Virus record (IMG/VR): IMGVR_UViG_3300032285_004054
Location: 62,001 to 126,000 of that record
Reading direction: 5' to 3' (one strand)
DNA length: 64,000 nt
Shown: piece after piece, positions 121 through 54,842 of the stretch
How positions within the stretch are numbered: position 1 is the first letter of the stretch
Layout of the letters: every line of letters starts with the position of its first letter
Notes under the pieces: model-generated
What the model was told of the DNA's origin: nothing
The model's input: the letters and a program-made list of their open reading frames with translations, nothing else
The model's database searches: none
Program-made: the position numbers and the translations under genes

Positions 121-128
121 TATAAATA
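121..128 (+). promoter_or_regulatory. T4-type late promoter TATAAATA
   Basis: Exact T4 gp55 late consensus, 9 nt before ATG 138. Confidence 0.75.
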
Positions 129-137
129 ATATATAAT

Positions 138-2186
138 ATGCCTGGCGTAAAAATTTCTGATCTTACACCTTCTCCTGATAATAAAATAGACATAGGTGAT
201 GCTATCCCTATGGCAAGATCAGGTACGACATATCAAGTACCTGGTGGTGCGTTTATAAATACTGTAACAAACGCTACTTCACAAGGAACCTCTCTTGTTA
301 AATCTCAAACATACGCTTCAAATACAGGGTATAATACACAAGTTAAAACCTTATCTGCTAACTCACCTATCGTATTAACGGATTCAGGTAATACAATTTC
401 ATATGACTTACCTTACGATAGTTCGTTAACTGTAACAAACGGACAATTAGGTATAAATTTTTCTACAGGTGGTGGTCTAGAGCTAGGAGCAGGAGGTGTT
501 AAGCTTGCAACTCAATCAGCTCCAGCGGCTGTTATAGCTGTCCGTCCTAGTGATACTAGCTCCCCTGCAGGCGCTGCAACAGATGATCAATGGGTAACAA
601 GAGTTAAGGTAACAACCGGTAATGATCAAGACACATTACAGCCGTATTTTAAAACATTTACAGGAGCTGCTAATTACGCGAATAATAATTTTTCAAGTAA
701 TTGTACAATTTATATTGACGAAAATACTATAGAAGGTACCCCGTCTCCTAACGGGCAGTCTCAGCTTGCAGGTAATTTTGGTAATCAATTAACAGGTCAG
801 TTTTTTACCCAAGCCCAAGTTGATGCAGCCTTTGGTGCCGGTAGCGGTCTTTTAGCGGGTATTTACTGTTTTAATAATCAATACAATGTTGCTAATTCAC
901 CTTATAGTGGGTTTCCTTGGGGAACATCTCTCTATACGCAAGGTGCAACAAACGTTTTTGCACGATATTATAGGTCTAGTATTAATCAGTGGAAAACAGA
1001 ACGCTATTATAACGAAGCTCCAAGAAGGATTTCAAGAAGACATTACCATGATACATCTGCTGTATTAACACCTCCAACATATAACGGTACTACCGGGGTT
1101 TGGTCAGGTGGAAATTTAGGTACAAACGCAAATAACTGGTTAAAATTTTTACCTGATAATTATCCTACAGGTAGAGGTGCCTATCAAGGTGTAAGAAGTT
1201 TTAACTTTAACACACCTAACGCTAGTGTATACAATATATGTTTTGAGGTAATAACAAATGGCGCTGATTGTACAGCTATAGAGTTTAACTCACAGGCTGG
1301 TATATCATTCCGTAACTGTACAGTTGCAGTAGGTGGAAGCGGATGCTTTAATTGGGGATTTTTAAATATTGATCAAAAAGCTAGAGTTTACGCGAGTGGT
1401 TCACCTTTAAGAGATCCAGGAAGTACTAACGATAGTTCTCCTGTTATGTCATTTCCTGGATACGGCTTTGTGTTATATGGTATTAATACAGTAACACCTT
1501 CTAATGTTGGTCACGGTGTAAAGCTTGACAACGACGGAGGTAGTGCTTTTTTCTCTAACTGGTCATATGACGCTTTCGTCTACACAACGGGTGGAGGTTC
1601 CGGTCTTCAAGGTAATCTTATATTAGCTGGTAAAATTAACTTACCGTATGGTGTGTTTTCTGTTAGTCGTAGTAACCAATTAACAACCGGCGGTATCGTA
1701 TTACAAGATAACTTAACAATTTCAACAAGCGCACTTGATCAAAGCTCTGCGCTTGGTTACAGTAATAATAAACAAAACATACCTGCTATTATTCTTGATC
1801 AAACTGCCCAGGTTGCGCAAATAAGTGATTACATTTCTAACTGGACATACCACATTAATAAAGGACCGAGTGTTACAAGTTATACCCAGCCTTCGATATT
1901 TTATCCGTGTACACTCTGGTGTTCAACAACTGCTAATAATACTGCACTAAATTCTGCTGTTGTAAATGGAGGAATAGTAACATATAATTCAAACGTAGTA
2001 AACAGCTCGAATATTAGTATACCTACTTACGCGCAGCAGCCTGCTAGAAGTTCGGTTGCAAATTTAGGTACGGCTAGAGGTGGTTCAGCACCATATGCGG
2101 GTAACACATTCTTAAATCTCACAGATTTATACACATTAACATCACCGTATAACAATACAGCTTATACAAAGCCGACATATTACTAA
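138..2186 (+). CDS. Tail fibre/tailspike-like virion protein
   Basis: 682 aa, N-terminal VKISDL fibre-type motif, G/N/S/T-rich beta-helix-like C-half, followed directly by a fibre chaperone gene. Confidence 0.6.
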   Translation: MPGVKISDLTPSPDNKIDIGDAIPMARSGTTYQVPGGAFINTVTNATSQGTSLVKSQTYASNTGYNTQVKTLSANSPIVLTDSGNTISYDLPYDSSLTVTNGQLGINFSTGGGLELGAGGVKLATQSAPAAVIAVRPSDTSSPAGAATDDQWVTRVKVTTGNDQDTLQPYFKTFTGAANYANNNFSSNCTIYIDENTIEGTPSPNGQSQLAGNFGNQLTGQFFTQAQVDAAFGAGSGLLAGIYCFNNQYNVANSPYSGFPWGTSLYTQGATNVFARYYRSSINQWKTERYYNEAPRRISRRHYHDTSAVLTPPTYNGTTGVWSGGNLGTNANNWLKFLPDNYPTGRGAYQGVRSFNFNTPNASVYNICFEVITNGADCTAIEFNSQAGISFRNCTVAVGGSGCFNWGFLNIDQKARVYASGSPLRDPGSTNDSSPVMSFPGYGFVLYGINTVTPSNVGHGVKLDNDGGSAFFSNWSYDAFVYTTGGGSGLQGNLILAGKINLPYGVFSVSRSNQLTTGGIVLQDNLTISTSALDQSSALGYSNNKQNIPAIILDQTAQVAQISDYISNWTYHINKGPSVTSYTQPSIFYPCTLWCSTTANNTALNSAVVNGGIVTYNSNVVNSSNISIPTYAQQPARSSVANLGTARGGSAPYAGNTFLNLTDLYTLTSPYNNTAYTKPTYY

Positions 2187-2187
2187 T

Positions 2188-2412
2188 ATGAACTTAAATT
2201 ATTTTACAAATACAGTAACTGTTGATTCTAAATGGGCTGAAATTAGACAACTACGAGATGATCTTTTGAAGCAAACAGACTGGACACAATTACCTGACGT
2301 ACAGCTAGATGATGCTACTAAAGCAGCTTATACTGCTTATAGACAAGCTTTAAGAGAATTACCTCAAAATAATACTGATCCTTTTAATATTGTATTACCT
2401 AGTAAGCCGTAG
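2188..2412 (+). CDS. Tail fibre assembly chaperone
   Basis: WAEIRQLRDDLLKQTDWTQLPD...YRQALRELPQ signature. Confidence 0.85.
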   Translation: MNLNYFTNTVTVDSKWAEIRQLRDDLLKQTDWTQLPDVQLDDATKAAYTAYRQALRELPQNNTDPFNIVLPSKP

Positions 2413-2438
2413 AATTTAGAATTAAATAATACTAGCAT

Positions 2439-3896
2439 ATGGCTAGTGTTAATTTTATACCTTTTACAGCTCTTCAACCAGTTGAGCTAAAGTACCAGTA
2501 TAACGTTAATGAACCGTTAAACTCTGAAGTTGTGAGTTATGATGACGGTTTAAGTTTTAAGAAACTTAACGGGTTACAAAACTATCAGGACGTCTCTATT
2601 AATAAAGGTTCGTGTTTTGCTTTAACAACAGCTATTAGTCTTAGTACCTTTTTTTCAACGAATCAAAGCATTGATATAAATCAAATACCTGGTACTGTTT
2701 ATCTACAATCTAGTTATAGTCAAAGCTACTATTTAGTGCATGATGGTTCTACTGATACAGTTAAATTATCTGCTACACCTAATTTAGTTTATATAAACCC
2801 TGTACGTGGTACAGGTTATTCGGAAATAGTTATTAACGGTAACTATTTACAGGTTGATGATTATTACCCTTATACAGTAAGAGCAAATAGTATACCTCTT
2901 GTAGGTGATAACGCTTATAGACAACAGTTTTATTGTAATTTTACAAACGGAACCGCAACTATATACAATTATATCGTTACAGGAGAAAAGAGATATCTAT
3001 CAATTAATACAATTGATAACACATTAAGAGCAACAGGAGTGATATTGAATAATAGTGTTGTAAATGATTATATTTTTCTTGTAACAGATCTAACTGTAAA
3101 CCAAATAAGTTACGGACATTTACCTAATAATAAATGGATTACGTATTATATGGATAATGAAAGTGCTGCAGGTAATAAAAGTATTGAAGTTAATAAAACT
3201 ATTAACGATAACGCAATTAACTTTCTTGTCGATTTTCCATACGATACTGCTATTAACACAGGGGTTGCAAATATTAATATAGCTAACTTAAAAACTGATT
3301 ATACACCAGGCGGAGGACCTGCTCCTGTTGATAATTCATATATACCTACTACTGTTACGTCGAATTTTGTTGTACCTGTAACAGCACCTGGAACTACTCA
3401 AATACCTCAATTGATTAATCCTTTTAGAATAACAAGTAGAGAATTTAGTACATCTCCATTCACTATACCTACCCCTACCTCTACATCAGAACTACCTGTA
3501 TCGTTAAGCGCTATAGGACCCGTTTACGTACGCGGTACAACAATACATACGTTAGGGGTTGGTACAGTTACAATAATCGCAACACAAGATGGTAATCTTG
3601 ACTTTTATCCTGCTGCACCATACTCTACTTCATTCGATATCTTACAGGCTAGCCAGGCTATAGCACCTTTTAGTGTAGATGATCAACTGTATACTGTAAT
3701 ACCGTTTAACATTACAATACCGGTAGCTACTTCTAATTTACCTGTCGTCGTTACTGTACAATCAGGCCCGGCGACCATTAGTGGTAATACTATTACTATG
3801 ACAGGTACAGGTAGAGTTGTACTAGCAGCTAATCAAGCAGGTAGTGCTTTATACACAGCTGCACCAACAGTAACAACTAGCTTTAATATTGCTTAA
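2439..3896 (+). CDS. Virion structural protein with two C-terminal Ig-like repeats
   Basis: Two ~78 aa repeats (PF.I..P..TS.LPV...GP....G.TI...G.G.V...A.Q.G...Y.AAP..TSF.I) at ~3406-3893; TAAATA at 2423-2428. Confidence 0.6.
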   Translation: MASVNFIPFTALQPVELKYQYNVNEPLNSEVVSYDDGLSFKKLNGLQNYQDVSINKGSCFALTTAISLSTFFSTNQSIDINQIPGTVYLQSSYSQSYYLVHDGSTDTVKLSATPNLVYINPVRGTGYSEIVINGNYLQVDDYYPYTVRANSIPLVGDNAYRQQFYCNFTNGTATIYNYIVTGEKRYLSINTIDNTLRATGVILNNSVVNDYIFLVTDLTVNQISYGHLPNNKWITYYMDNESAAGNKSIEVNKTINDNAINFLVDFPYDTAINTGVANINIANLKTDYTPGGGPAPVDNSYIPTTVTSNFVVPVTAPGTTQIPQLINPFRITSREFSTSPFTIPTPTSTSELPVSLSAIGPVYVRGTTIHTLGVGTVTIIATQDGNLDFYPAAPYSTSFDILQASQAIAPFSVDDQLYTVIPFNITIPVATSNLPVVVTVQSGPATISGNTITMTGTGRVVLAANQAGSALYTAAPTVTTSFNIA

Positions 3897-3911
3897 AATT
3901 AAATAACAACA

Positions 3912-6386: not shown

Positions 6387-6410
6387 TTTTAGTTTAAATA
6401 ATTACTAAGA

Positions 6411-9400: not shown

Positions 9401-9932
9401 GGTAGGATCTGGTGGTACATGCCTTGGAGGAAAAAGAGGTTCTGTAAATAATGGCGGTTCAGGTGGTTCTACATATGTAAAATACGGTACCACAACATTA
9501 GTCGCCGGAGGCGGTGGCGGCGGTGGTGGTGGTAGTGATTATTCTGGAGGACGCGGTGGCGGTGGTGGATCTGGTAACGTTACTAAAGGTGCTGATGGTT
9601 CCCCTGGTGGTGCAGGTACAGGTGACCATTCAAGTAGTACAGGTGGTCGTGGTGGTGGTAATGGCGGTCAAGGCGCTTCGGCTTTTGATAGAACCGGACC
9701 GTTATATTGGTCTGGTGCTAGTGGTGGTAACGGTTCGGTAACACTCAGCTATTACTACAACGGTGGTACCGCAATACTACTTGACGAAAATACTACAATT
9801 AACAATAAAAATGGTTCTATTAAAGGTGGTGCTGCTGGAGGAGGTGCAAGTCAGGTCGGTAGTGCTATTGTAGGTATTAGTCATGTTCTAAATTCACCAT
9901 TAGCAGGTACTGTAACTGGAGGTACCTCATAA
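6411..9932 (+). CDS. Large virion protein with PKD-like domain and C-terminal glycine-rich adhesin region
   Basis: 1173 aa; IDFGD...YKSTGPKTITVT PKD-like segment; polyglycine tract ~9270-9860; TAAATA at 6395-6400. Confidence 0.6.
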   Translation: MSIALSSVLVSAIAFNNEPFVRSLTAALVWNPIVGSPDVFLPFKATNITNVYTGQWAIDITTAPGALSAYVGANRTPYTFDQQLSIDSITPIVVEFSTDTYDPTYVPLEGPNEDTIPTRTLYNLSLTGVCGNWYLGGSSSSITVTYDNFPGLNADFLVNYESTTRNTSFYRLVSTTPFPITVNLSSGYFPLKTKLKDWYFTTDIVLNRSHLKYNSIAEFNLAYPNFNCSTPTVCSLQVFVSAVSCVGALTGFFTPHIINLQRMDAHFINAFPVADFAAYPTYHFKNSVSYEVLDATNYTNSPGVCFYGEGHTEVINLSARYVDSMTNYIWSVGNNNTGIFNVAGNLQSNTNSVSITSALYNYPVIPITLQVCNTTIPSSAPIIGYNDYNGTPFYYPYYITTVDFSGNLLPTNTTFRNSISVVPYDATITIFNPGITSQNVFLSPDGSISYFTATFTAGLCGEITTDPCYDKYGLVWKWGNFTNCDTNYSSFVNHPSSWRTTMRSGAFPKKWRKEGAVLVDGSQNSSPIQCLGDTNFWTLSTSVWPGVVYGVTDVYKYNLRVDRNLPQAYYTVPPGTVTHANLTVTKSVTCNVNNLGTFTNDWQNKTTLLQATTSFNIYGTPLIRIYTPNRYVKLGESIFFQNLIEGANFLTQLTIDFGDSDIPTTIYTGKNVVNNFTVQYKSTGPKTITVTGTIDYGYGVIGSVTQTFTNIVTIVNEYDQIDESKFITQDSALTIPYPDEPLIAPNDNVVADNINSILTKIYDNLLYLEGRGYVYPNTTAESFGWLGTALYTTAAPATGLTWQSQDCTTNPFGLTWTELSCATNNVPIVVAPKPVQAPVVETVTHVNVFAKPVYIIDVKQDTYNFSLMNELILRDWDQVIAIDVIVNVWPGVTVASQDTSSPAMNLQPLPSISTLTLNNSGTIVGAQGASSTTTYANSTTWKVLKNVGSISVTLVGAGGAGGSAEEVDAGGAGGGGGGGGTSSGTIEVTPGETVTITVGSGGTCLGGKRGSVNNGGSGGSTYVKYGTTTLVAGGGGGGGGGSDYSGGRGGGGGSGNVTKGADGSPGGAGTGDHSSSTGGRGGGNGGQGASAFDRTGPLYWSGASGGNGSVTLSYYYNGGTAILLDENTTINNKNGSIKGGAAGGGASQVGSAIVGISHVLNSPLAGTVTGGTS

Positions 9933-9947
9933 ATATTTTTTAACAAT

Positions 9948-11384: not shown

Positions 11385-11411
11385 TTTATAGTATAAATAA
11401 TTTACACACAT

Positions 11412-11882: not shown

Positions 11883-11884
11883 TT

Positions 11885-12997: not shown

Positions 12998-13014
12998 TAT
13001 AAATAATCTTATAT

Positions 13015-13971
13015 ATGTCTTGTGACGGAACAACATACACATCTCAAATACCCGAAACCGACTGCATAGGTGATTCGTTAACTACTATTAATAGTAATTT
13101 CAGTGCACTAGACGTTAGCGTATGTTCATTAAGTGCTGCGATCGGTAGTATTGCAGGAATTGACATTGATAATGTTTATGATGCAACACCAATCGGTACT
13201 GTCGTTTATTTTGCTGCTTCTGCTGCTCCTGTCGGTTGGTTTGAGTGTTACGGACAATCTTTAGATAAAACACTTTATAAACCACTCTTTGATGTTATCG
13301 GTTATACATATGGTGGTTCTGGAAACAATTTTAATCTTCCTGATTTAAGAGGTCAATTCGTAAGAGGCTGGGACCATGGAGCTGGTGTTGATAGTGGAAG
13401 AGCTTTTGGTAGTTCGCAAGATGATGCGTTTAAATCTCACGCTCACGGATTTTCGCTTCCAGATGGAACCGTTGGTGGTGGTGACGCTTATGCAAGCACA
13501 TATACTAGAATAAACGATTACGGTAGAACAACAGGCGCTGAAGGTGATACCGAGACTCGCCCCAAAAACGTAGCACTTCTTCCTTGTATCAAATACGCTC
13601 AAGTTCAAGCGTTAACACAAGTTGGCTTAAGTGCTCAAAATGTTTTAAATGTAGTTAATAATTTAAGCCCAGGGGTTGCTAAAGCTTGGGTGAATTTTGA
13701 CGGTACAACAGGTGTGTATAGAGGTACACCATATAACGTTTCAGGCATTACAAAAAACGGGTCCGGAGACTGGACAGTACATTTTGCAAATAATTTAGCT
13801 GATGCAAATTATACCGTAACAGCTCAATGGGGCAACGCGACTCATACAAGTGATACCGGTATATATGTTAGTTTGGGATCTTTATCAGCTAGTGGATTTG
13901 AAATATTTTCTCAAACTTCTGGTTCTATGTATAACCCTGCAGTTTTTTGTATACAGGTTTTTGGTAGTTAA
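13015..13971 (+). CDS. Tail fibre protein with tail-collar domain, anchor family
   Basis: DCIGDSLTTINSNFSALD anchor; PIGTVVYFAASAAPVGWFEC...FNLPDLRGQFVRGWD collar; ETRPKNVALLPCIK; C-terminal AKAWVNFDG domain. Confidence 0.85.
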   Translation: MSCDGTTYTSQIPETDCIGDSLTTINSNFSALDVSVCSLSAAIGSIAGIDIDNVYDATPIGTVVYFAASAAPVGWFECYGQSLDKTLYKPLFDVIGYTYGGSGNNFNLPDLRGQFVRGWDHGAGVDSGRAFGSSQDDAFKSHAHGFSLPDGTVGGGDAYASTYTRINDYGRTTGAEGDTETRPKNVALLPCIKYAQVQALTQVGLSAQNVLNVVNNLSPGVAKAWVNFDGTTGVYRGTPYNVSGITKNGSGDWTVHFANNLADANYTVTAQWGNATHTSDTGIYVSLGSLSASGFEIFSQTSGSMYNPAVFCIQVFGS

Positions 13972-13979
13972 TTAATGTT

Positions 13980-14399: not shown

Positions 14400-14434
14400 A
14401 ATTCTAACAAATTAGCATAAATATAAATACATAT

Positions 14435-15163: not shown

Positions 15164-15185
15164 GACTTAATAAAAGTTAAAATAG

Positions 15186-15215: not shown

Positions 15216-15242
15216 GTATACCTAAACGGCATAAATACTATT

Positions 15243-17066: not shown

Positions 17067-17074
17067 GATTCTAT

Positions 17075-17260
17075 TTAGTTCTTCTTGTTTTTATTAGCAA
17101 CCTCTTTCTTTTCCTTCTTAATAAGACCGAGCATAGTATGCTTAAAGTCACGTGTTTCATTGTACCAGTTCTCAAGATCCTTACCTCCGAGACCCTTTGG
17201 AGGCTGTAGATTCCAGATCTTGCTTGTTTTTAACATTTGTTTAGATGGCCAGATATGCAT
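17075..17260 (-). CDS. Hypothetical small basic protein
   Basis: ORF track 17075..17302; ATG 17260 (MHIWPSK) is the more plausible start. Confidence 0.5.
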   Translation of the reverse strand: MHIWPSKQMLKTSKIWNLQPPKGLGGKDLENWYNETRDFKHTMLGLIKKEKKEVANKNKKN

Positions 17261-17304: not shown

Positions 17305-17332
17305 TTGTTTTTTATTTTTTTGCAGGTATAAT
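17305..17332 (+). promoter_or_regulatory. Sigma70-like early promoter of rnh
   Basis: TTGTTT-N16-TATAAT, 6 nt before ATG 17339. Confidence 0.6.
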
Positions 17333-18583: not shown

Positions 18584-18641
18584 ATCTATACTAATATTTA
18601 TTTGTTTAACAGGTATAGAACGTATAAATAATAGATAATAT

Positions 18642-19390: not shown

Positions 19391-19402
19391 ATAGTAATTA
19401 TA

Positions 19403-19644: not shown

Positions 19645-19673
19645 AATATACAAAAAACTACTTTTACAGTCAA
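19645..19673 (-). promoter_or_regulatory. Sigma70-like early promoter
   Basis: TTGACT-N17-TATATT, 8 nt before ATG 19636. Confidence 0.65.
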
Positions 19674-19966: not shown

Positions 19967-19988
19967 CTAATAAATTTAGATTCTTTTA

Positions 19989-22046: not shown

Positions 22047-22094
22047 CTTTAATATATTTATGCCTCAAAGAGAATAAATAACATTACATAATAT

Positions 22095-22762: not shown

Positions 22763-23095
22763 GTGACAGCTTTTGAACTAAACGAAGAACTAAAAGAGCG
22801 TTGTGTAAAGTTAGGTGCTAGTAAAGCTGTTACTACTTTTTATAAAAAAGGTGTACCTATAATACCGGAAACGTTTTACGAAACTATAATTGATATACCT
22901 AGTTCATTATCGAATAATGAAATAACTAAAATAGTACAATTGGTTTTAGGGTATAAATTTATCTTCGACGAAGAGTACGAATTTACTGATCCTTTATTAG
23001 AAGGTAATAAAGGAGATTTTAGAATAGCATATGCTATATTCTTAAACGATAAACCTTTTAACTCAGAGATTAATTTTGTTGGTAAATTACCTTAA
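22763..23095 (+). CDS. Hypothetical protein
   Basis: ORF after TAAATA at 22752-22757; GTG 22763 or TTG 22760 start. Confidence 0.6.
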   Translation: MTAFELNEELKERCVKLGASKAVTTFYKKGVPIIPETFYETIIDIPSSLSNNEITKIVQLVLGYKFIFDEEYEFTDPLLEGNKGDFRIAYAIFLNDKPFNSEINFVGKLP

Positions 23096-23108
23096 ATAAA
23101 AAAATATT

Positions 23109-23794: not shown

Positions 23795-23819
23795 TGTGTA
23801 TTATTTATTAAATAAAATA

Positions 23820-24257: not shown

Positions 24258-24515
24258 TTATATAATAGCTGCTAATTCTCTTAATGCGTCTTCAAATGAA
24301 ACAACATCAACATTGTTTGTTTTAGTATCTAGTTTAGTTTGCTCTTCTACAGGTATAACAGATCTTAACCGTTCAAATACACCTCTTTCAAATGCATTAG
24401 CTTCAGGATCTCTTATTATGGTAGGAGAGTGTCTTCCATGACTTAAACTGGGGAGATGAATGGTCTCCTTAGGGACACACTTAGTATAAACGTCTTCTAA
24501 ATTCATATTAAGCAC
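24258..24515 (-). CDS. Hypothetical protein
   Basis: 85 aa ORF downstream of the endolysin. Confidence 0.6.
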   Translation of the reverse strand: MLNMNLEDVYTKCVPKETIHLPSLSHGRHSPTIIRDPEANAFERGVFERLRSVIPVEEQTKLDTKTNNVDVVSFEDALRELAAII

Positions 24516-25469: not shown

Positions 25470-25479
25470 TTAAAATTAT

Positions 25480-25590
25480 TTATCTCAAATAATAATACAT
25501 AACATGAGCCATACCATAGCCGAATAATAAGCTATAGATACAGATCCAGATAGGAGGATAGGAAGAGTGTGGTCGGTATTCGTCCGTCAT
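25480..25590 (-). CDS. 36 aa single-TM peptide
   Basis: MTDEYRPHSSYPPIWICIYSLLFGYGMAHVMYYYLR; below the track cutoff. Confidence 0.45.
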   Translation of the reverse strand: MTDEYRPHSSYPPIWICIYSLLFGYGMAHVMYYYLR

Positions 25591-26351: not shown

Positions 26352-26359
26352 TTTTTTAT

Positions 26360-26920
26360 TTATAAAATAGGTTTGGATATATCAAGTATGGTATTATAGA
26401 TAATATCTCTGGCTCGTTCAACGGTCATTTCACCAAAAAGTGTAGATCTTGGATGTATTCGTACTTCTGGAAACTCTGGTGGCTCGTAAGGAGAATCGAT
26501 ACCTGTAAAGTCTTTTATCTCCCCTGCACGTGCTTTTTTATACAAACCTTTAGGATCTCTTAACTCGCAAGTACGTAAAGGTGTATCCATATACACTTCA
26601 ATAAATCTAGCGCTAGCGTATTTCTCTAGCATATCTCGAGCTTCATCTCGCATTGATCGGAGAGGGGAAATCATAGCTACAATAACAAGATTAGCCTTTT
26701 GAAAAGTAAGCATATTTTTAGCACAATAAATAGCTTCAGATACCATTCTCTGTCTACTCTTCATATCAAAGCCTTTTGGTATATCATAACTAGCTCTCAA
26801 AGCATCACCATCAATAAGACCTGTCCGGAATTGAAATATACACTTGTTATACAAAGCATTTGCAACGGTTGTTTTGCCAGCTCCAGATAAACCTGTAATC
26901 CAAACAACAGTAGGTTTCAT
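26360..26920 (-). CDS. cysC: Adenylyl-sulfate (APS) kinase
   Basis: WITGLSGAGKTT, DGDALR, ISP and RDPKGLYKKARAGEIKDFTGIDSPYEPP; start probably ATG 26920 (ATGA overlap). Confidence 0.93.
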   Translation of the reverse strand: MKPTVVWITGLSGAGKTTVANALYNKCIFQFRTGLIDGDALRASYDIPKGFDMKSRQRMVSEAIYCAKNMLTFQKANLVIVAMISPLRSMRDEARDMLEKYASARFIEVYMDTPLRTCELRDPKGLYKKARAGEIKDFTGIDSPYEPPEFPEVRIHPRSTLFGEMTVERARDIIYNTILDISKPIL

Positions 26921-27634: not shown

Positions 27635-27662
27635 ATTATAGAGCAAAAGAAAGGTAAGTCAA
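27635..27662 (-). promoter_or_regulatory. Sigma70-like early promoter of the cysC-containing operon
   Basis: TTGACT-N16-TATAAT, 7 nt before ATG 27627. Confidence 0.7.
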
Positions 27663-27675
27663 ATAAATAGTATAG

Positions 27676-28700: not shown

Positions 28701-28717
28701 AGTGTGTTATTACTTAA

Positions 28718-28919: not shown

Positions 28920-29777
28920 TTATTTAATATTCAATATATCGGAAATAAACTTTTTAGCTGTTTGAGAAGTTGTATTGTTGTTTAAGAAATGATTCTCAAA
29001 ACGTTCAATATATTTTTCATATACTGTTTCGTATTTCTCGTTTAGAATATCTTTATTTACATTAATACATAGTTCTTTAGGAAAAGAAGTCATTGTGTTA
29101 GTAGGACATAGTTCGATATTTTTAAACAACGGTATACAACCATTACCTAAAATTTCGTAATGCCTCATACAATCCCAGCCTGCTTTTTTACATGTAACTC
29201 CGAACCGAGCATCATTATAGTCTTTATAATAATCTGTTTCATTATTATAAATGTATGTTGTTTTGTCTAGCGGTGTTATGTATGATGTATCTTTTATTTT
29301 CTTCTTATTAAAGTTTACTTTACTAGTTGGTAATCCAAACGAAATCGGTAGTAGTCGTTCTTTTGTGTATATTAATTCTCTCTTAAAATAGCAAATTCCT
29401 AAATCATATACAGGGTGTATATTAACTTCATCTTCACCGTCTACACAAATAATTTTATCTTTTGAATAATACTCTAGAATATTTTCTATATAGTCGTTAC
29501 ATCTCCAAATAGAGCCGTATACTATTAAATCGAAGTATTTGTTTTTAATTTTATTTGTTATATCCGTTCTATCTACTTCTAAATCCTCTAGTACTCTTGT
29601 TACGGTCATACCTTTACCGTACATTTGTTTAGCAACGTTCTCGCTGTAGCTTAGATAGCTGTGTTGTTGCTTTTGTATATCTACAACATTAGCCCCGTAC
29701 AACTCTTTTAACCCTATTAAAAGACAATCGTTTTGATAATCAAGATGATCACCTTTTGTGAAGTACAATATTTTCAT
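28920..29777 (-). CDS. Glycosyltransferase-like protein (GT-B, exostosin-like C-terminal motif)
   Basis: YFKRE and KAGWDCMRHYEILGNGCIP. Confidence 0.55.
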   Translation of the reverse strand: MKILYFTKGDHLDYQNDCLLIGLKELYGANVVDIQKQQHSYLSYSENVAKQMYGKGMTVTRVLEDLEVDRTDITNKIKNKYFDLIVYGSIWRCNDYIENILEYYSKDKIICVDGEDEVNIHPVYDLGICYFKRELIYTKERLLPISFGLPTSKVNFNKKKIKDTSYITPLDKTTYIYNNETDYYKDYNDARFGVTCKKAGWDCMRHYEILGNGCIPLFKNIELCPTNTMTSFPKELCINVNKDILNEKYETVYEKYIERFENHFLNNNTTSQTAKKFISDILNIK

Positions 29778-31401: not shown

Positions 31402-31490
31402 TTGTGTATAGTATTTAAGGTCGAATATAAAGGAAAATGCTGTGATGTGCAAGTCCAAAAGTTACTCTAACTTTGAATAAATATTAATAG

Positions 31491-32285: not shown

Positions 32286-32318
32286 CATCTGTTATTTTTT
32301 AACATAAGTAGTAGTACT

Positions 32319-37021: not shown

Positions 37022-37046
37022 GTTAGTTACTTAATTTTGTTATCAA

Positions 37047-39419: not shown

Positions 39420-39459
39420 TGGTTAATAAATATTTAACCGTTAATTTTAAAAATTAAAG

Positions 39460-42113: not shown

Positions 42114-42128
42114 ATTGTTTATTATTTA

Positions 42129-44396: not shown

Positions 44397-44414
44397 TGTA
44401 AGTTATTTATACAT

Positions 44415-44829: not shown

Positions 44830-44876
44830 ATGTACATATATTTATTCTACTCAGTAGTATTTTTAGTGTTTAATAC

Positions 44877-44934: not shown

Positions 44935-46404
44935 TTAGAGATAGACAGCGGCGGATCCAGGTGTGAAGGACTGGCCCAGACCGGTGCAGATTACTAAGTG
45001 ATAGTAAAGGTTAGCACCGAAAATGTGGTCAACAACACCGTAACGGGTTAAGAGACCAACACGAGGACTGAAGTCATTCGGACCGATTGTACGCTGAACC
45101 ATTACAGGGATGTAAGGGCAGTATACGATACCGGTATCATAATACTCAGGGCCCTTATAGCCGAGCAGGGCGTAATCGACCTGTCCGACGGGACGCTTGT
45201 TACCACCAGCACTGTAGCCAGCGCCTGCGGGATTGTACCCAGCGTTGACTTGTGCCTCTGTACGAGTATCACGATAGATCTGGAAACGACCACCAACGGC
45301 ACCAACTTTAGCAATACCAACGGGTGTGGTATTTACTGAGCCAGTAACGGGCTGCCATGTGAATGTGGGCAGTGACTCAAGAATAGCGCAAATACGAGGT
45401 GTAGCAATAATGAAATTGGCTGCACCACGGCGGTTGCGGATAGCGACACGATTGGCCTCAACAACAATTCTGTTGTAGAAGTCACGAGCGCGCTCACCGG
45501 ACCAGCGACCGTCAGCAGAAATTGCTGACCATGTGCTGTAACCAACACCGGCGCCTGCGGTTAAGCAGGTCTGAATCATACGTGAAATCATTTCACGGTC
45601 AATTTCAGCCTGAATTTCGTAGGACATGGCGTTTGTGAGCTCGGCATCGATGTCGATACCATTCATATTCTTAAGATCCTGCTCTAATTCGACAGACCAC
45701 TTAGCGGCGAGACGGCGTGTGCCGGCCTCGACAGCGGTCTTCTCAAATGATACTGTTACCTGAGGGATGTTGGAGCTGAGTTCAAACTGGCTGAGGATCG
45801 CGGCTACGCCGGCGTCTTCAGGCAGAATGGCCCAATCATCGTTACCGGTTAAGTTACCACTGGTAACGCCTGTGAAGGCGGTATTCAGATAGTTGTAACC
45901 GATTTCCTTACCCTTGCTAGCACTAGCAGGTCCATACATTGATGTTGCCTGAGCCCCACCGAGGGTGAGATCATTACGGCCATCACCGTATGTGCTATTA
46001 CCGAGGGAAGATGCCTCGTAGCGGTAACGCATGGCGAATGCCAGACCAACGGGTCCTGTCATGGGCTGTACACCAACGATCTCATTTGTGATGAGTTCGG
46101 GGAATGTACGGCGGATCATGGGGATCAGAACCTTAGGAAGACGAGCATCACCGTTTGCGTATGTGTCGCTGTTAGGAATGGTACCAGGGTTAACCTGATA
46201 GGCATTACCACCAAAGACACCACCACTAGCAGTGTTGGAAGACTCAAAGCACCACTTCTCCTGGTTTTCCAGAAGGATGGCGGTATTGAGACGTGTGTTA
46301 TCATTTTCGATAGCAGCTACCTTGTCAGAAGAGTAGTCCAGAACTGGAGCCCACTTTTCAACTAAAGATGTAGCCTTGGATTTATCGATATGCAGAAGTT
46401 CCAT
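44935..46404 (-). CDS. gp23: Major capsid protein
   Basis: EKWAPVL, LLENQ, GVQPMTGPVGLAFAMR, RRLAAKWSVELEQDLK, YCPYIP and PRVGLLTRYG. Confidence 0.97.
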   Translation of the reverse strand: MELLHIDKSKATSLVEKWAPVLDYSSDKVAAIENDNTRLNTAILLENQEKWCFESSNTASGGVFGGNAYQVNPGTIPNSDTYANGDARLPKVLIPMIRRTFPELITNEIVGVQPMTGPVGLAFAMRYRYEASSLGNSTYGDGRNDLTLGGAQATSMYGPASASKGKEIGYNYLNTAFTGVTSGNLTGNDDWAILPEDAGVAAILSQFELSSNIPQVTVSFEKTAVEAGTRRLAAKWSVELEQDLKNMNGIDIDAELTNAMSYEIQAEIDREMISRMIQTCLTAGAGVGYSTWSAISADGRWSGERARDFYNRIVVEANRVAIRNRRGAANFIIATPRICAILESLPTFTWQPVTGSVNTTPVGIAKVGAVGGRFQIYRDTRTEAQVNAGYNPAGAGYSAGGNKRPVGQVDYALLGYKGPEYYDTGIVYCPYIPVMVQRTIGPNDFSPRVGLLTRYGVVDHIFGANLYYHLVICTGLGQSFTPGSAAVYL

Positions 46405-46461
46405 AGTTATAAATTTTCCTTTTTGTTAAAAGATTTTCGACCTTGTTGAGTATGAAAAATT

Positions 46462-47436: not shown

Positions 47437-47466
47437 AAGTGTTGTATATTTATTTAATCTAATTGG

Positions 47467-48297: not shown

Positions 48298-48363
48298 AGA
48301 TTGATAACATTATTTATACCGGTTAGTCACAATTTCACCTGTAGATTAATAAATACTTATGTT

Positions 48364-50489: not shown

Positions 50490-50528
50490 TACGTATTATT
50501 TAATACAGTACACTGATAAATATTATAC

Positions 50529-52519: not shown

Positions 52520-52860
52520 TATTCAGTAATATCAGCTATAATTGTCCAACTACCTTCAATATATGTTTTATTAAACGTACCGTCAAAAGAGGTTACTTGT
52601 AAATCATATTTGTATGTACCAGGTAGTATGTTTATAATTTGTGGTGGTATTTGTAAGGAATTATTATTATCGTTGTATAATATTTTACCATTCTCAATCG
52701 AGAGTTCTAATACAACAGGAGAGTCAATATCTTCTCTTAATTGCATTTTTGCTGTTTTATCAGCAAGATTAAAAGGTAAATCGTTTCTACTGATAGAGAT
52801 AGAAGATATACCATCCCATGTATCACCTCGACGGTGTGTAGGTATATTATATAAAGCCAT
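52519..52860 (-). CDS. BppU-N-like fibre adaptor protein
   Basis: RRGDTW, MQLR, NGKI, GTYKYDLQ and TYIEG...DITE; TAAATA at 52867-52872. Confidence 0.6.
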   Translation of the reverse strand: MALYNIPTHRRGDTWDGISSISISRNDLPFNLADKTAKMQLREDIDSPVVLELSIENGKILYNDNNNSLQIPPQIINILPGTYKYDLQVTSFDGTFNKTYIEGSWTIIADITE

Positions 52861-52879
52861 ATAGCTTATTTAAGCTAAA

Positions 52880-54802
52880 TTATGCTGCTCCTGGAGAACC
52901 TACTGCTGGAGAAGAACCTTGTGTAGGTGCTAAACCTGGAGTCTCAGATGGTGCTCCTGCGCCTGGAGGAGGAGGACTAGCTGTACCTACGTTAGCACTA
53001 CCTTCTTCACCGCCTGGAGATGGCGACGATCCTCCAAATTCAGGTATTGCGGAACCTCCACCGCCACCACCACCTCCAGAGGTTAGAGGTGGTAGACCAC
53101 CAGCTCCTTCTTCCCCTGTACCGAGACCGGCTTGAGCTGCTAATTGCTCTCTGAAGTTAGGTCCTGAAGTTTGTATTTGTGTTAATTCCCATAAGAGTGC
53201 GGCATCTTTCTTCTGCCACTCTCTATTTTCTTTCATTAAATCGTCAGATAAACCTAGATAATATTTTTGAGCATATGACTTAGATATAGACTCGTTGCCT
53301 GTAATCTTAAGGAAATTATCAAACTTGAGATCAAGCAGCTGTTGCTCTCTCATCGCCATGAACGATGTAGGTATATTAAACTCTACATGCATTGAACGTT
53401 CACGTAACTTAAATTGCTTCCAAAGACCTTTTAACTTGAGATGCGCTATAAATGTATCTCTAATGCTAGTGGCAAACTGGCGCTGAAGACGAATAACGAA
53501 TCTAGCAAATCTTAATTCATCTCTTGTTATTTCAGTACCGTCTTTAAATGGTGAATCAGCTACAAGGAATCTACTTACAGGTATCTTTAGAGAGTTATAA
53601 AGCTTCTTTAAGAAATAATTTAAATCATCTAACTGACCTAAATTAGCACCACCTTGCATCATTTCAACATCTGTACCTTTTCCTTGGGCGTCTACAGGGA
53701 ACCAATATGAATCTAACATCGACTGTGGATCGTAAACGTTAGTCATTGAGCCTTTTTCTCCGTGAGATGTGTCAAAGTTTTTCTTTGACCAGTACTGCTG
53801 CATTAATCTCTTAACGTATGCTTCTGCTTTAGGTGCAGGCATTGTACCTGTATATACTTTAAACTTAAGACGTTCAGGTGCTCTAACTAAACGATAGATA
53901 ATAATAGAATCCTCAAGTAATGATAACTGACGATAAGCACGTTTTGAGTTCTCAATATAAGGTAAACGAATTGTCTTAAACTCATTCCAAATACCAGAGT
54001 GAACATATGTTACCTGAGCTTTCTGCATAAAGAAAAGCTCTTCCTGGTCTTTCTTATTAATTGATGAAGCGGGTGCTTTGACTGTCTTTCTTAATAAGAA
54101 CCCCTTTACAAGTTCGTTCTGTACGTTAGAATAAACAGGGTTAATAATTTCAGATGGTATGCTAACTAAACCAATTATACCTAGTTCAGGTTTATCGTTA
54201 TCTATAATATTTTCCCAGAACAGTTCACCGTCAATTAAGAACTGTCTAAAATACTCCCAACCAGAGTCTTCTAGATCATAGATAACTACGTGTTTTTGGA
54301 ATTCTTTTTCGATTAAATCTTTAACTTCTTTTGTATATTCACCTCTTAATTGGAAGTTGACAATAATATCATTTTCGTCTTTTACAACACATTCATCGCA
54401 AATTTCATCTAAACAATCTGCAAGTTCAGCGTATGCAGCCATACGTCTATAATCTTGCAAGCGGCGTGTTTTGTCTTTATCAACACTTGCATAGATAAAG
54501 GCCTGATAATCTTTGTTAATTAAGATGTTACCTGGAGCAGAACTATCACCGATACCTGCACCTGCAGGGTCTTGTAAAAAGACGGACTGTGCTTGTATAA
54601 ACTCTTCTCTCTTAGGAGCTACACCCTTAAAGTCATAAAACTTAGGATTACGCTGAATCATCGAATCAATGATCTGGTATGCGTAAGGGAGTCTCGATAT
54701 AAACGCGCCTAGGAGAGATGTTGACGGATAGGCCTGATCCTGAACAGGACCTGTAGAACTTCCCGGGATAGCGTTGTTATATGTTTGCTGATTGTAAATC
54801 AC
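52880..54802 (-). CDS. gp20: Portal vertex protein
   Basis: YRRMA, IDGELF, QLSLLEDSIIIYRLVRAPER, DSYWFP, LKIPVSR and EITRDELRF; GTG start after TAAATA at 54809-54814; long G/P tail. Confidence 0.95.
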   Translation of the reverse strand: MIYNQQTYNNAIPGSSTGPVQDQAYPSTSLLGAFISRLPYAYQIIDSMIQRNPKFYDFKGVAPKREEFIQAQSVFLQDPAGAGIGDSSAPGNILINKDYQAFIYASVDKDKTRRLQDYRRMAAYAELADCLDEICDECVVKDENDIIVNFQLRGEYTKEVKDLIEKEFQKHVVIYDLEDSGWEYFRQFLIDGELFWENIIDNDKPELGIIGLVSIPSEIINPVYSNVQNELVKGFLLRKTVKAPASSINKKDQEELFFMQKAQVTYVHSGIWNEFKTIRLPYIENSKRAYRQLSLLEDSIIIYRLVRAPERLKFKVYTGTMPAPKAEAYVKRLMQQYWSKKNFDTSHGEKGSMTNVYDPQSMLDSYWFPVDAQGKGTDVEMMQGGANLGQLDDLNYFLKKLYNSLKIPVSRFLVADSPFKDGTEITRDELRFARFVIRLQRQFATSIRDTFIAHLKLKGLWKQFKLRERSMHVEFNIPTSFMAMREQQLLDLKFDNFLKITGNESISKSYAQKYYLGLSDDLMKENREWQKKDAALLWELTQIQTSGPNFREQLAAQAGLGTGEEGAGGLPPLTSGGGGGGGGSAIPEFGGSSPSPGGEEGSANVGTASPPPPGAGAPSETPGLAPTQGSSPAVGSPGAA

Positions 54803-54842
54803 TTAAGATATTTAATTTGAAGTTTTGATAAAACAAATAGTT

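What the first reader, a model, noticed from the sequence alone, without database searches (positions are those of the whole stretch)
121..54814. Nearly every late gene has its own TAAATA promoter just before the start codon, without Shine-Dalgarno
Seen: more than 30 genes on both strands have TAAATA (or TATAAATA, or the variant TAAGTA) ending about 5-14 nt before the start. Examples are 121, 2423, 3900, 6395, 9930, 11392, 12998, 14422, 15232, 18623, 22075, 27664, 31478, 48350 and 50517 on plus, and 17072, 22055, 31412, 39431, 44404, 48311, 50497, 52867 and 54809 on minus. Some overlap the previous gene's TAA. Purine-rich SD motifs are not evident there. Known: T4 gp55 late promoters are TATAAATA -10 elements. 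Inference: transcripts are leaderless or have very short leaders, so each gene is a portable unit. That would explain the scrambled two-strand gene order.
Basis: partly seen in the sequence, partly recalled or inferred. Interest (0 to 1): 0.6.

Follow-up and report, generated by a model that had tools for sequence, protein, structure and literature searches.

The report
Start-codon-abutting late promoters, T4-like phage
An uncultured 218-kb T4-like phage places its late-promoter box (TAAATA) and its ordinary early promoters only 5-14 bases before start codons, so most of its messages probably begin at or next to the AUG and need no ribosome-binding site, which is unlike T4.

Summary
In the window, 33 of 65 genes have an exact TAAATA ending 5-14 nt before the start. 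Composition-matched shuffles give 2.2 +/- 1.5. Eight more genes carry variants, and 14 of the rest are tightly coupled operon-internal genes.

The window is part of a complete 218.4-kb T4-like virus genome that encodes a gp55 late-sigma homolog. The motif matches the T4-type late box. It has no -35 element, is followed by an AT-rich stretch, sits before virion genes, is absent before replication genes, and is depleted inside genes on both strands.

Its position differs from T4. In T4 and cyanophage Syn9 the box lies 21-30 nt before the ATG, ahead of a Shine-Dalgarno site. Here and in about 40 related contigs it lies 5-6 nt before the ATG, which puts the predicted start of transcription on the A of the ATG.

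Canonical sigma-70-type early and middle promoters (TTGnnn-N16-18-TAnnnT) sit at the same distance. Leaderless expression therefore appears to be genome-wide, not only late.

Pelagibacter phage HTVC008M shows the same late geometry.

No RNA data exist, gp33 and gp45 were not found, and the host is unknown. The "portable unit explains scrambling" idea remains untested.

The parts
123..128 (+). late box TAAATA, 9 nt before ATG of gene 138-2186 (fibre-like protein)
2423..2428 (+). late box, 10 nt before ATG of 2439-3896
3900..3905 (+). late box, 6 nt before ATG of 3912-6386 (Laminin_G_3 domain)
6395..6400 (+). late box, 10 nt before ATG of 6411-9932 (glycine-rich fibre-like protein)
9930..9935 (+). 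late box, 12 nt before ATG of 9948-11384; its TAA is the stop codon of gene 6411-9932
11394..11399 (+). late box, 12 nt before ATG of 11412-11882
13000..13005 (+). late box, 9 nt before ATG of 13015-13971 (phage tail collar domain)
14424..14429 (+). late box, 5 nt before ATG of 14435-15163
15232..15237 (+). late box, 5 nt before ATG of 15243-15830
17072..17077 (-). late box, 5 nt before ATG of 16797-17066
18595..18600 (-). late box, 11 nt before ATG of 18212-18583; back to back with the box at 18625
18625..18630 (+). late box, 11 nt before ATG of 18642-18932
22055..22060 (-). late box, 8 nt before ATG of 19989-22046; divergent partner of the box at 22075
22075..22080 (+). late box, 14 nt before ATG of 22095-22754
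23093..23098 (+). late box, 10 nt before ATG of 23109-23291
23802..23807 (-). late box, 7 nt before ATG of 23285-23794
25477..25482 (-). late box, 7 nt before ATG of 25116-25469
26357..26362 (-). late box, 5 nt before ATG of 25770-26351
27664..27669 (+). late box, 6 nt before ATG of 27676-28347
28921..28926 (-). late box, 5 nt before ATG of 28718-28915
31412..31417 (-). late box, 10 nt before ATG of 30100-31401; divergent partner of the box at 31478
31478..31483 (+). late box, 7 nt before ATG of 31491-32285
39431..39436 (-). late box, 11 nt before ATG of 37047-39419
42123..42128 (-). late box, 9 nt before ATG of 41352-42113
44404..44409 (-). late box, 7 nt before ATG of 43617-44396
44839..44844 (-). 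late box, 9 nt before ATG of 44476-44829
47447..47452 (-). late box, 10 nt before ATG of the scaffold-like gene 46462-47436, which lies upstream of the capsid gene
48311..48316 (-). late box, 13 nt before ATG of 47623-48297 (gp21 prohead protease homolog); divergent partner of the box at 48350
48350..48355 (+). late box, 8 nt before ATG of 48364-49170
50497..50502 (-). late box, 7 nt before ATG of 49629-50489 (head-tail adaptor, phrog_211); divergent partner of the box at 50517, in a 39-bp intergenic region
50517..50522 (+). late box, 6 nt before ATG of 50529-51953 (alginate lyase domain)
52867..52872 (-). late box, 6 nt before ATG of 52519-52860
54809..54814 (-). late box, 6 nt before the GTG start of the gp20 portal gene 52880-54802
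13969..13974 (+). variant box TAATTA, 5 nt before ATG of 13980-14399
19395..19400 (-). variant box TAATTA, 4 nt before ATG of 18929-19390
19973..19978 (-). variant box TAAATT, 6 nt before ATG of 19682-19966
24259..24264 (-). variant box TATATA, 5 nt before ATG of 23948-24253
28711..28716 (-). variant box TAAGTA, 10 nt before ATG of 28344-28700
32305..32310 (+). variant box TAAGTA, 8 nt before ATG of 32319-32873
37028..37033 (-). variant box TAAGTA, 6 nt before ATG of 34826-37021 (weak, sub-threshold Pfam match to a gp5/VgrG-type OB domain)
63238..63243 (-). variant box TAAATT, 10 nt before ATG of 59625-63227 (PKD-domain protein)
17327..17332 (+). sigma-70-type -10 hexamer TATAAT, 6 nt before ATG of 17339-18238, with a TTG-type -35 element 16-18 nt upstream
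19645..19650 (-). sigma-70-type -10 hexamer TATATT (with TTGACT, 17-nt spacer), 8 nt before ATG of 19403-19636
27635..27640 (-). sigma-70-type -10 hexamer TATAAT, 7 nt before ATG of 27151-27627
44935..46404 (-). gp23 major capsid gene. This is the exception: it has no abutting box and a conserved SD-like AAAGGAGAAA about 10-18 nt before the ATG

Best explanation
The TAAATA hexamers, consensus (A/T)TAAATA(A/T)T, are T4-type late promoters. They are -10-only boxes read by host RNA polymerase carrying the phage's gp55-family sigma.

They lie about 20 nt closer to the coding sequence than in T4. The commonest spacing is 5-7 nt in this phage and 5-6 nt in its relatives, which puts the predicted +1 on or 1-2 nt before the A of the AUG. 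The longer spacings (8-14 nt) would give leaders of 3-9 nt. Late messages are therefore leaderless or nearly so and cannot use a Shine-Dalgarno site.

A 5'-terminal AUG can serve only the first cistron. Each gene therefore needs its own promoter unless it is translationally coupled (stop and start overlapping, or no more than 12 nt apart) or has an SD. That is the pattern observed.

Intrinsic terminators are not enriched. The likely output is nested, overlapping transcripts, each translated mainly from its own 5' AUG.

The same logic holds for early and middle genes. They carry canonical TTGACA-N17-TAnAnT promoters with the -10 hexamer 6 nt before the ATG.

Shown: the motif statistics, their conservation, the gp55 gene, and the contrast with T4 and Syn9.

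Inferred: the transcription start positions, the dependence on gp55, and leaderless translation.
For: - Enrichment and position. The window has 33 of 65 genes with the motif, against 2.2 in shuffles.
- Conservation across the clade: in 38 related IMG/VR loci (capsid protein 65-82% identical) the motif start peaks at -11 (58 genes) and -12 (41 genes). Pooled over 1231 genes, TAAATA at spacer 4-8 occurs 246 times against 3 at control positions. Positions 1, 2, 5 and 6 are strict and position 4 is tolerant.
- gp55 homologs are present here and in relatives G001 and G002.
- Promoter-like context: there is no conserved -35 element, and the 5 nt after the box are 72-90% A/T. This matches the description of T4 late promoters (PMC2988020).
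- The T4 late box lies at -13..-6 (PMC1524935).
- Gene class: the motif precedes the protease, scaffold, portal, sheath, tube, adaptor and fibre-like genes. It is absent before the gp43, gp41, uvsX, gp32, gp44, gp46, gp47 and gp55 homologs.
- Depletion inside genes: TAAATA is the most depleted of the 15 A4T2 hexamers inside coding sequence, on the sense strand (0.39x) and on the antisense strand (0.47x). That is expected for a DNA-level signal.
- Controls with the same script: in T4 and Syn9 the box lies 21-30 nt before the ATG, and SD-like sites precede 63% and 31% of genes. Here they precede 9%.
- Sigma-70-type promoters: the full pattern peaks at spacer 6 (20 genes against about 1 background). 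Relatives give 30 genes at spacer 6.
- A Pribnow box 6-8 nt from starts is the accepted genomic signature of leaderless transcription (PMC6028130; PMC12340547).
- Genes without a promoter are mostly coupled: 78 genes, median gap -1.
- Terminators are not enriched: 10 found against 9.4 expected.
Against: - No 5'-end data exist. The only public run that holds the sequence is DNA.
- gp33 and the gp45 sliding clamp, which are the co-activators of T4 late transcription, were not detected by PHROG or Pfam models, phmmer or hhalign.
- The C-terminus of the gp55 homolog shows no obvious clamp-binding tail.
- About half of this phage's boxes have spacers of 8-14 nt. Those messages would be short-leadered rather than strictly leaderless.
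- The motif lies where a ribosome-binding element would also lie.
- The capsid gene uses a leader with an SD-like site, so the host can read SD sites.
Confidence: 0.7

Rival explanations
1. TAAATA is a non-Shine-Dalgarno translation signal on the mRNA, such as an A/U-rich ribosome or S1 binding element like the non-SD sites of Bacteroidota. Transcripts would start further upstream and be polycistronic.
For: - The motif sits 5-14 nt before starts, where ribosome-binding sites lie.
- SD sites are rare.
- The phage encodes a ribosomal protein bS21, which sits beside the anti-SD.
- GeneMarkS-2 authors note that promoter and RBS signals can occupy the same distance from starts (PMC6028130).
Against: - The hexamer is sequence-specific (T1, A2, T5 and A6 are strict) and identical to the T4-family late box. 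In T4 and Syn9 that box lies upstream of the SD.
- It is absent before early and replication genes. Those instead carry complete -35/-10 promoters at the same distance.
- It is absent before the 78 coupled internal genes.
- It is depleted on the antisense strand of genes as well, which an RNA-level signal would not require.
- The host-type promoters here are TTGACA/TATAAT-like, not the Bacteroidota type.
Confidence: 0.12
2. TAAATA marks an endoribonuclease processing site that cuts long late transcripts into units beginning just before each AUG.
For: - It would also yield short-leader messages and explain the lack of terminators.
- It cannot be excluded without RNA data.
Against: - It does not explain the identity with the gp55-type box, the presence of gp55, or the antisense depletion.
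- It does not explain why sigma-70 promoters occupy the same position before early genes.
- No candidate nuclease was sought or found.
Confidence: 0.05
3. The pattern is a by-product of AT-rich intergenic DNA, stop codons (TAA) and the way starts were called.
For: - The genome is 64% A+T.
- In 10 cases the TAA is the upstream stop codon.
- Starts were called by a crude first-ATG rule.
Against: - Composition-matched shuffles give 2.2 genes against 33 observed.
- Other A4T2 hexamers are far less enriched.
- The commonest spacings (5 and 7 nt) put the TAA out of frame with the gene.
- The same script gives a different distribution in T4, Syn9 and PAU.
- In HTVC008M the sites fall at the starts annotated by the depositors.
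Confidence: 0.01

Closest known systems
Bacteriophage T4 late promoters (gp55 sigma, gp33, gp45 clamp; TATAAATA at -13..-6)
   Same: - A gp55-family sigma is encoded.
- The core box is the same (A/T)TAAATA, with no -35 element.
- The stretch after the box is AT-rich.
- The box lies before virion genes, and there are many promoters per late region.
   Different: - In T4 the box lies 21-30 nt before the ATG and is followed by a strong SD (63% of genes). Here it lies 5-14 nt before the ATG with no SD (9% of genes), so the predicted start is at the AUG.
- gp33 and gp45 were not detectable here.
- The first two bases of the octamer are weakly conserved, as in RB49, KVP40, S-PM2 and Aeh1 (PMC1524935).
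T4-like cyanophage late promoters (e.g. Syn9)
   Same: - These are the nearest cultured relatives by capsid and portal protein (about 30-35% identity).
- They share the ATAAATA box, gp55, and accessory genes such as Hsp20, 2OG-Fe(II) oxygenase and ThyX.
   Different: - Syn9 has the box 21-30 nt before starts, and its sigma-70-type promoters are also 21-30 nt away.
- Its genes lie almost all on one strand.
Pelagibacter phage HTVC008M (pelagimyophage)
   Same: - Found here: (A/T)TAAATAG followed by exactly 5 nt and the ATG at 11 genes (16 genes at 4-8 nt). These include the annotated starts of the head closure, tail tube cap and baseplate wedge genes.
- It encodes gp55 and bS21 (PMC6375957).
   Different: - Its sigma-70-type promoters are not at leaderless distance, and SD-like sites precede 54% of genes.
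- It is collinear.
- It shares only about 31% capsid protein identity with this phage.
- The published search for late promoters in pelagimyophages failed (PMC7029224).
Leaderless genes of Actinobacteria and Deinococcus-Thermus (GeneMarkS-2 'group C')
   Same: - A -10 box lies 6-8 nt before the start of first genes in operons.
- Internal genes have an SD or are coupled.
- No 5' UTR is predicted (PMC6028130, PMC12340547).
   Different: - Here the pattern is in a phage.
- It involves two promoter classes, one of which depends on a phage sigma.
- The host is unknown.
Poxvirus late promoters (TAAATG overlapping the start codon). This comparison is from my own knowledge and is an analogy only.
   Same: A short A/T-rich late box lies directly at the start codon of nearly every late gene, on both strands of a large virus genome.
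   Different: The polymerase and host domain are unrelated, and poxvirus late mRNAs carry 5' poly(A) heads. There is no homology.

Membership tests
T4-type (gp55-dependent) late promoter | The phage encodes a gp55-family late sigma factor | tested here: met
   Genome 169825-170385 (-): phrog_234 E 6.7e-25 and 2e-24; T4 gp55 2.4e-7. It lies next to the gp47 homolog. It is also present in relatives G001 and G002.
T4-type (gp55-dependent) late promoter | Conserved (T)ATAAATA box | tested here: met
   TAAATA is the top hexamer (81 genes against 4.1 expected). A precedes it in 51 of 83 cases. The first T of the octamer is not conserved, as in several T4 relatives.
T4-type (gp55-dependent) late promoter | No -35 element; AT-rich segment just downstream of the box | tested here: met
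   Column counts show no conserved position from -25 to -3. The five positions after the box are 72-90% A/T (description in PMC2988020).
T4-type (gp55-dependent) late promoter | Found before late (virion) genes and not before replication genes | tested here: met
   The motif precedes the protease, scaffold, portal, sheath, tube, adaptor and fibre-like genes. None precedes the gp43, gp41, uvsX, gp32, gp44, gp46, gp47 or gp55 homologs.
T4-type (gp55-dependent) late promoter | Box at -13..-6 relative to a mapped transcription start | not testable with these tools
   No RNA run holds the phage. A metagenome contig scan gave 8 loci, none informative.
T4-type (gp55-dependent) late promoter | gp33 co-activator present | tested here: inconclusive
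   phrog_254, T4 and Syn9 gp33 by phmmer, and hhalign with and without relatives found nothing. The protein is small and fast-evolving, so absence is not shown.
T4-type (gp55-dependent) late promoter | gp45 sliding clamp as activator | tested here: inconclusive
   PF02916, phrog_223, phmmer and hhalign found nothing. A gp44 clamp-loader homolog is present, and the DNA polymerase C-terminus has a clamp-binding-like tail, so a clamp is expected.
Leaderless-transcript gene organisation (GeneMarkS-2 group C pattern) | -10 box about 6-8 nt before the start codon of first genes | tested here: met
   The late box has a modal spacer of 6 nt here and 5-6 nt in relatives. Full sigma-70-type promoters peak at spacer 6.
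Leaderless-transcript gene organisation (GeneMarkS-2 group C pattern) | No SD before these genes; internal genes use an SD or coupling | tested here: met
   SD-like sites precede 9% of genes. 78 promoter-less genes are coupled (median gap -1), and 29 have SD-like sites, mostly operon-internal.
Leaderless-transcript gene organisation (GeneMarkS-2 group C pattern) | Transcript 5' end coincides with the start codon | not testable with these tools
   No RNA data. Three contig ends at or near ATGs are only suggestive.
Non-SD ribosome-binding motif (Bacteroidota-type, group B) | The same motif precedes all genes, including operon-internal ones | tested here: not met
   The motif is missing before the 78 coupled genes and before early and replication genes.
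Non-SD ribosome-binding motif (Bacteroidota-type, group B) | Host-type promoters of the Bacteroidota kind (TTTG / TAnnTTTG; from my own knowledge) | tested here: not met
   Early promoters read (C)TTGAC/A, then 17 nt, then TATACT, TAGACT or TATAAT.

The most novel reading that the evidence does not exclude
This phage clade, and the pelagimyophages for their late genes, run a dedicated leaderless translation programme. Nearly all messages would begin at the AUG, and the phage-encoded ribosomal protein bS21 (present here and in HTVC008M) would remodel the platform and anti-SD region of host ribosomes. Under that model 5'-AUG phage messages out-compete SD-led host messages. That would be host take-over at the level of translation initiation, written into promoter geometry.
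Probability: 0.12. Interest if true: 0.85.

Novelty: new variant of a known kind. Interest (0 to 1): 0.62.

Why it matters
T4 late transcription is a textbook system, and its promoters have always been described with SD-bearing leaders.

- **Extent.** A large, mostly uncultured clade uses the same sigma and box, moved so that transcription and translation would start at the same nucleotide. At least 598 related capsid loci are in IMG/VR.
- **Prediction tools.** This would explain why T4-derived promoter and operon prediction failed for pelagimyophages (PMC7029224).
- **Annotation.** The box fixes gene starts in these phages. It gives the GTG start of the portal gene here.
- **Gene organisation.** It gives a mechanistic reason for "one promoter per gene".
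- **Testable system.** Leaderless translation and phage bS21 can be studied in a cultured pair, HTVC008M on Pelagibacter.
- **Host.** It constrains the unknown host. The host should have sigma-70-type promoters, and the SD-like sites before the capsid gene and operon-internal genes suggest it can use SD pairing. It should also translate 5'-terminal AUGs efficiently.

Tried and rejected
- **RNA evidence.** The look-up of sequencing runs found one DNA metagenome and no RNA.
- **Metagenome contigs.** A scan with the scaffold protein gave only 8 loci, and all extend past the start.
- **Contig ends as proxies for transcript ends.**
  - L023 and L033 begin 2-3 nt before the scaffold ATG, and L057 begins at an ATG.
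  - A general test of 104 contig ends was not significant, with 4 hits against 3.6 expected.
  - I could not verify that those samples are RNA.
- **gp33 and gp45.** These searches all found nothing: PF02916, phrog_223, phrog_254, phmmer with the T4 and Syn9 proteins, and hhalign with small profiles, with and without relatives.
  - One candidate next to the DNA polymerase (genome 158560-159414) looked by eye like a TIM-barrel transglycosylase-type enzyme rather than a clamp. It has no Pfam hit, so I did not fold it.
- **Host inference.**
  - The GMP reductase gene is about 50% identical both to freshwater Comamonadaceae and to Bacilli, so it is uninformative.
  - bS21 finds only itself in the word search, mostly viral clusters in the Atlas, and at most 31% identity in five bacterial genomes.
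  - No WhiB was found.
  - Relatives cannot be drawn for a virus record.
- **Bacteroidota host idea.** I rejected it because the early promoters are TTGACA/TATAAT-like. Sphingomonas phage PAU, whose host is a Bacteroidota member by my recollection, shows no such geometry.
- **Near-identical DNA.** Megablast found none in the GenBank phage collection.

Full report
**What the window is.** The 64-kb window is bases 62001-126000 of a 218,400-bp IMG/VR virus record that CheckV rates complete. Its G+C content is 36%.
- It is a distant T4-like myovirus.
  - The window holds a gp23 capsid gene (Pfam E 7e-90) and a gp20 portal gene (E 1e-96). It also holds a gp21 protease homolog, a scaffold-like gene, a tail-collar domain protein, several fibre-like proteins and a head-tail adaptor. 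One protein has a weak, sub-threshold match to a gp5/VgrG-type OB domain.
  - The rest of the genome holds homologs of gp17, gp18, gp19, gp32, gp41, gp43, gp44, gp46, gp47, uvsX and uvsW, plus 14 tRNA genes.
- The nearest cultured relatives are cyanomyoviruses, at only about 30-35% capsid and portal protein identity. No near-identical DNA is in the GenBank phage collection.
- IMG/VR holds at least 598 contigs with a related capsid gene. The best 80 are 65-100% identical.

**The observation.**
- All 24 listed coordinates check out.
- I used a uniform crude gene call: the first ATG of each open frame, 308 genes in the genome.
- The start of TAAATA piles up at -20..-10 relative to the A of the ATG, with the mode at -12.
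- TAAATA is the most enriched of all 4096 hexamers in the 26 nt before starts. It occurs at 81 genes against 4.1 expected (p 3e-78). Of its 279 genomic occurrences, 87 lie just before a called start.
- In the window, 33 of 65 genes have the exact hexamer 5-14 nt before the start. Composition-matched shuffles give 2.2 +/- 1.5.
- The remaining window genes divide as follows:
  - 8 carry single-base variants.
  - 14 are coupled to the upstream gene (gap of 12 nt or less).
  - 4 have sigma-70-type promoters.
  - 2 have SD-like sites.
  - 4 have nothing.
- The aligned consensus is (A/T)TAAATA(A/T)T. It has no conserved -35 region and is followed by an A/T-rich stretch.
- In ten cases the TAA of the motif is the stop codon of the preceding gene.
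- SD-like tetramers precede 9% of genes.

**Conservation.**
- In 38 related loci of at least 8 kb (613 genes, G+C 33-46%) the motif start peaks at -11 (58 genes) and -12 (41 genes).
- Two long relatives, G001 (139 kb) and G002 (125 kb), behave like the window's genome and also encode gp55.
- Pooled over 1231 genes, TAAATA at spacer 4-8 occurs 246 times against 3 at control positions.
  - Tolerated variants are TAAGTA (37), TAATTA (34), TAAATT (24), TATATA (22) and TTAATA (18).
  - Substitutions at positions 1, 2, 5 and 6 otherwise do not rise above control positions.
- Inside coding sequence TAAATA is the most depleted of the 15 A4T2 hexamers, on the sense strand (0.39 of expectation) and on the antisense strand (0.47). 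This fits a DNA-level signal that must be avoided on both strands.

**What it is.**
- The box is the core of the T4-family late promoter. In T4 the promoter is TATAAATA at -13..-6. The first T is poorly conserved in many relatives, and Aeh1 uses CTAAATA (PMC1524935).
- T4 late promoters have no -35 element and an AT-rich segment after the box (PMC2988020).
- The genome encodes a gp55 homolog at 169825-170385 (-), next to the gp47 homolog.
- The box precedes virion genes and is absent before the replication genes and before gp55 itself.
- These four tests for a T4-type late promoter are therefore met.
- The co-activators gp33 and gp45 were not found by any sequence method.
  - A gp44 clamp-loader homolog is present.
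  - The DNA polymerase ends in a clamp-binding-like tail.
  - I treat the presence of gp33 and gp45 as unresolved, not as absence.

**How it differs, and how it probably works.**
- The same script places the box 21-30 nt before the ATG in T4 and in cyanophage Syn9. There it is followed by SD sites, in 63% and 31% of genes respectively.
- Here it lies 20 nt closer. With TAAATA at -11..-6, a 5-nt spacer puts +1 on the A of the ATG.
  - Relatives peak at spacers of 5-6 nt.
  - In this phage, 17 of the 33 window boxes have spacers of 5-7 nt, giving leaders of 0-2 nt.
  - The other 16 have spacers of 8-14 nt, giving leaders of 3-9 nt.
- The feature is not restricted to late genes. Small early genes (genome 190-218 kb and 0-9 kb) and replication genes (gp32, uvsX, gp44 and others) carry canonical promoters.
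  - These read (C)TTGAC/A, then 16-18 nt, then TATACT, TAGACT or TATAAT, then 6 nt, then ATG.
  - The full pattern TTGnnn-N16-18-TAnnnT peaks sharply at spacer 6. There are 20 genes here against about 1 per background position, 30 genes in the related loci, and 32 and 22 genes at spacers 4-8 in G001 and G002.
- A Pribnow box 6-8 nt before starts is the accepted genomic signature of leaderless transcription (PMC6028130; PMC12340547).
- I therefore read the whole genome as organised for 5'-terminal AUG messages. This gives a reason for "a promoter per gene": only the first cistron of a leaderless message can be initiated this way.
  - Genes without a promoter are almost all stop-start coupled (78 genes, median gap -1) or have SD-like sites (29 genes).
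  - Terminators are not enriched (10 found against 9.4 expected in window 1-20000).
  - Nested read-through transcripts are therefore likely.

**An exception.** The capsid gene has no abutting box.
- In this phage and 35 relatives it has a conserved SD-like AAAGGAGAAA and an upstream conserved element.
- The host ribosome can therefore evidently use SD pairing. The absence of SD elsewhere is a property of the phage's promoter placement, not of an SD-blind host.
- Together with the TTGACA-type early promoters, this argues against a Bacteroidota-like host.
- The host remains unknown.

**An unexpected parallel.** Pelagibacter phage HTVC008M has (A/T)TAAATAG followed by exactly 5 nt and the ATG at 11 genes.
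- These sites include the depositors' annotated starts of the head closure, tail tube cap and baseplate wedge genes.
- Its sigma-70-type promoters are not at that distance, and SD-like sites are common.
- A published attempt to predict late promoters in pelagimyophages with cyanophage-derived rules failed (PMC7029224). The abutting geometry may be the reason.
- HTVC008M encodes ribosomal protein bS21 (PMC6375957).
- So does the window's genome, at 190721-190936 (-). The match is PF01165 at 41.7 bits, and the gene lies beside a tRNA cluster behind a leaderless-type sigma-70 promoter.
- bS21 supports the anti-SD region, and its loss favours leaderless translation in E. coli (PMC10491246).
- Others have proposed that phage bS21 biases ribosomes toward phage messages (PMC9723584).
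- A functional link to leaderless expression is speculative. I found bS21 in neither of the two incomplete relatives.

**The "portable unit" idea.**
- This clade switches strand 18-24 times per 100 genes. T4 switches 6.3 times, HTVC008M 6.5, Syn9 12.4 and PAU 2.8.
- Ten of 28 divergent gene pairs have back-to-back TAAATA boxes, nine of them in intergenic regions of 38-89 bp.
- This is compatible with self-contained gene units that tolerate inversion.
- HTVC008M has the abutting late boxes without the scrambling. The arrangement is therefore not sufficient, and causality is untested.

**Rivals.**
- A non-SD ribosome-binding motif is the main alternative (about 0.12). The evidence against it:
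  - The class specificity of the motif.
  - Its identity with the gp55-type box.
  - Its depletion on the antisense strand.
  - The full promoters at the same distance before other gene classes.
- An RNA-processing site (about 0.05) cannot be excluded without RNA data.
- Chance or a calling artefact is excluded by the controls.

**Novelty.**
- The promoter type is known.
- I did not find the following described in the searchable literature, which is incomplete:
  - The start-codon-abutting placement.
  - Its conservation across a large uncultured T4-like clade.
  - Its extension to sigma-70-type promoters.
  - Its occurrence in a cultured pelagimyophage.
- I rate it a new variant of a known kind. 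Direct 5'-end mapping is the decisive missing piece.

Noticed in passing
genome 190721-190936 (-), outside the window (L232:1456-1671): The phage encodes a 71-aa ribosomal protein bS21 homolog (PF01165, 41.7 bits). It lies next to a cluster of 7 tRNA genes and sits behind a leaderless-type sigma-70 promoter. Its nearest Atlas clusters by features are viral bS21 families.
   Followed up: partly
window 46405-46500 (-), and the equivalent region in 35 related loci: The capsid gene alone has a conserved SD-like AAAGGAGAAA about 10-18 nt before the ATG. Further upstream lies a conserved element, TTCATACTCA, 3-8 nt, AAGGTCGAAAA. This may be a distinct promoter, a processing site or a leader element for the most abundant protein.
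   Followed up: partly
Pelagibacter phage HTVC008M (NC_020484), e.g. starts at 18943, 19456, 31132, 49760: The cultured pelagimyophage has (A/T)TAAATAG followed by exactly 5 nt and the ATG at 11 genes, including annotated structural genes. The published late-promoter prediction for this group had failed.
   Followed up: partly
genome 190-218 kb and 0-9 kb (L105, L111, L112); in the window e.g. 17327-17332 and 27635-27640: Early and middle genes carry canonical TTGAC/A, 17 nt, TA(T/G)ACT promoters whose -10 hexamer ends 6 nt before the ATG. Many also share a (T/C)CCTAAAG stretch in the spacer between the two hexamers.
   Followed up: yes
genome 7.3-9.1 kb and 195.3-199.0 kb: There are two tandem arrays of about 14 paralogous small genes (94-211 aa) that overlap by about 11 nt. 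The conserved TGGAGG 'SD' before each start is also the codons for the conserved C-terminal ..TFGGLL(D) tail of the preceding paralog. These genes account for most of the genome's SD peak.
   Followed up: no
related IMG/VR contigs L023, L033 and L057: Two short contigs from different samples begin 2-3 nt before the scaffold gene's ATG, and a third begins exactly at the ATG of the small ORF upstream. If those samples are metatranscriptomes, these ends could be transcript 5' ends. I could not verify the sample type, and a general test of contig ends was not significant.
   Followed up: partly
genome 150.8-159.4 kb (L109): A cluster holds two GTP cyclohydrolases (a folE2-type and a second one), a formyl transferase domain protein, AAA_28 proteins and a conserved 284-aa protein. 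That protein's motifs look by eye like a transglycosylase-type TIM barrel. Glycosyltransferases lie nearby. Together these suggest DNA base hypermodification.
   Followed up: no
genome 159642-161441 (-): The gp43 DNA polymerase homolog is called at only 599 aa, and an unassigned gap and a 54-aa ORF follow upstream. The gene may be split or interrupted. Its C-terminus (..TDLFDLLS) resembles a clamp-binding tail, although no clamp gene was recognised.
   Followed up: no
window 15186-15213: This is the only strong hairpin in the first 20 kb: a 12-bp palindromic stem between genes 14435-15163 and 15243-15830. It could act as a terminator in both directions. Overall, terminator-like sites are not enriched.
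   Followed up: no
window 50490-50528, 22047-22094, 48298-48363 and others: Very short divergent intergenic regions (38-89 bp) hold two late boxes in opposite orientation. Ten of the 28 divergent gene pairs in the genome have such back-to-back late boxes.
   Followed up: partly
genome 186309-187250 (-) (L111:309-1250): A GMP reductase/IMPDH-family gene is about 50% identical both to freshwater Comamonadaceae and to Bacilli. ThyX, Hsp20 and 2OG-Fe(II) oxygenase genes are also present, as in cyano- and pelagimyophages.
   Followed up: partly
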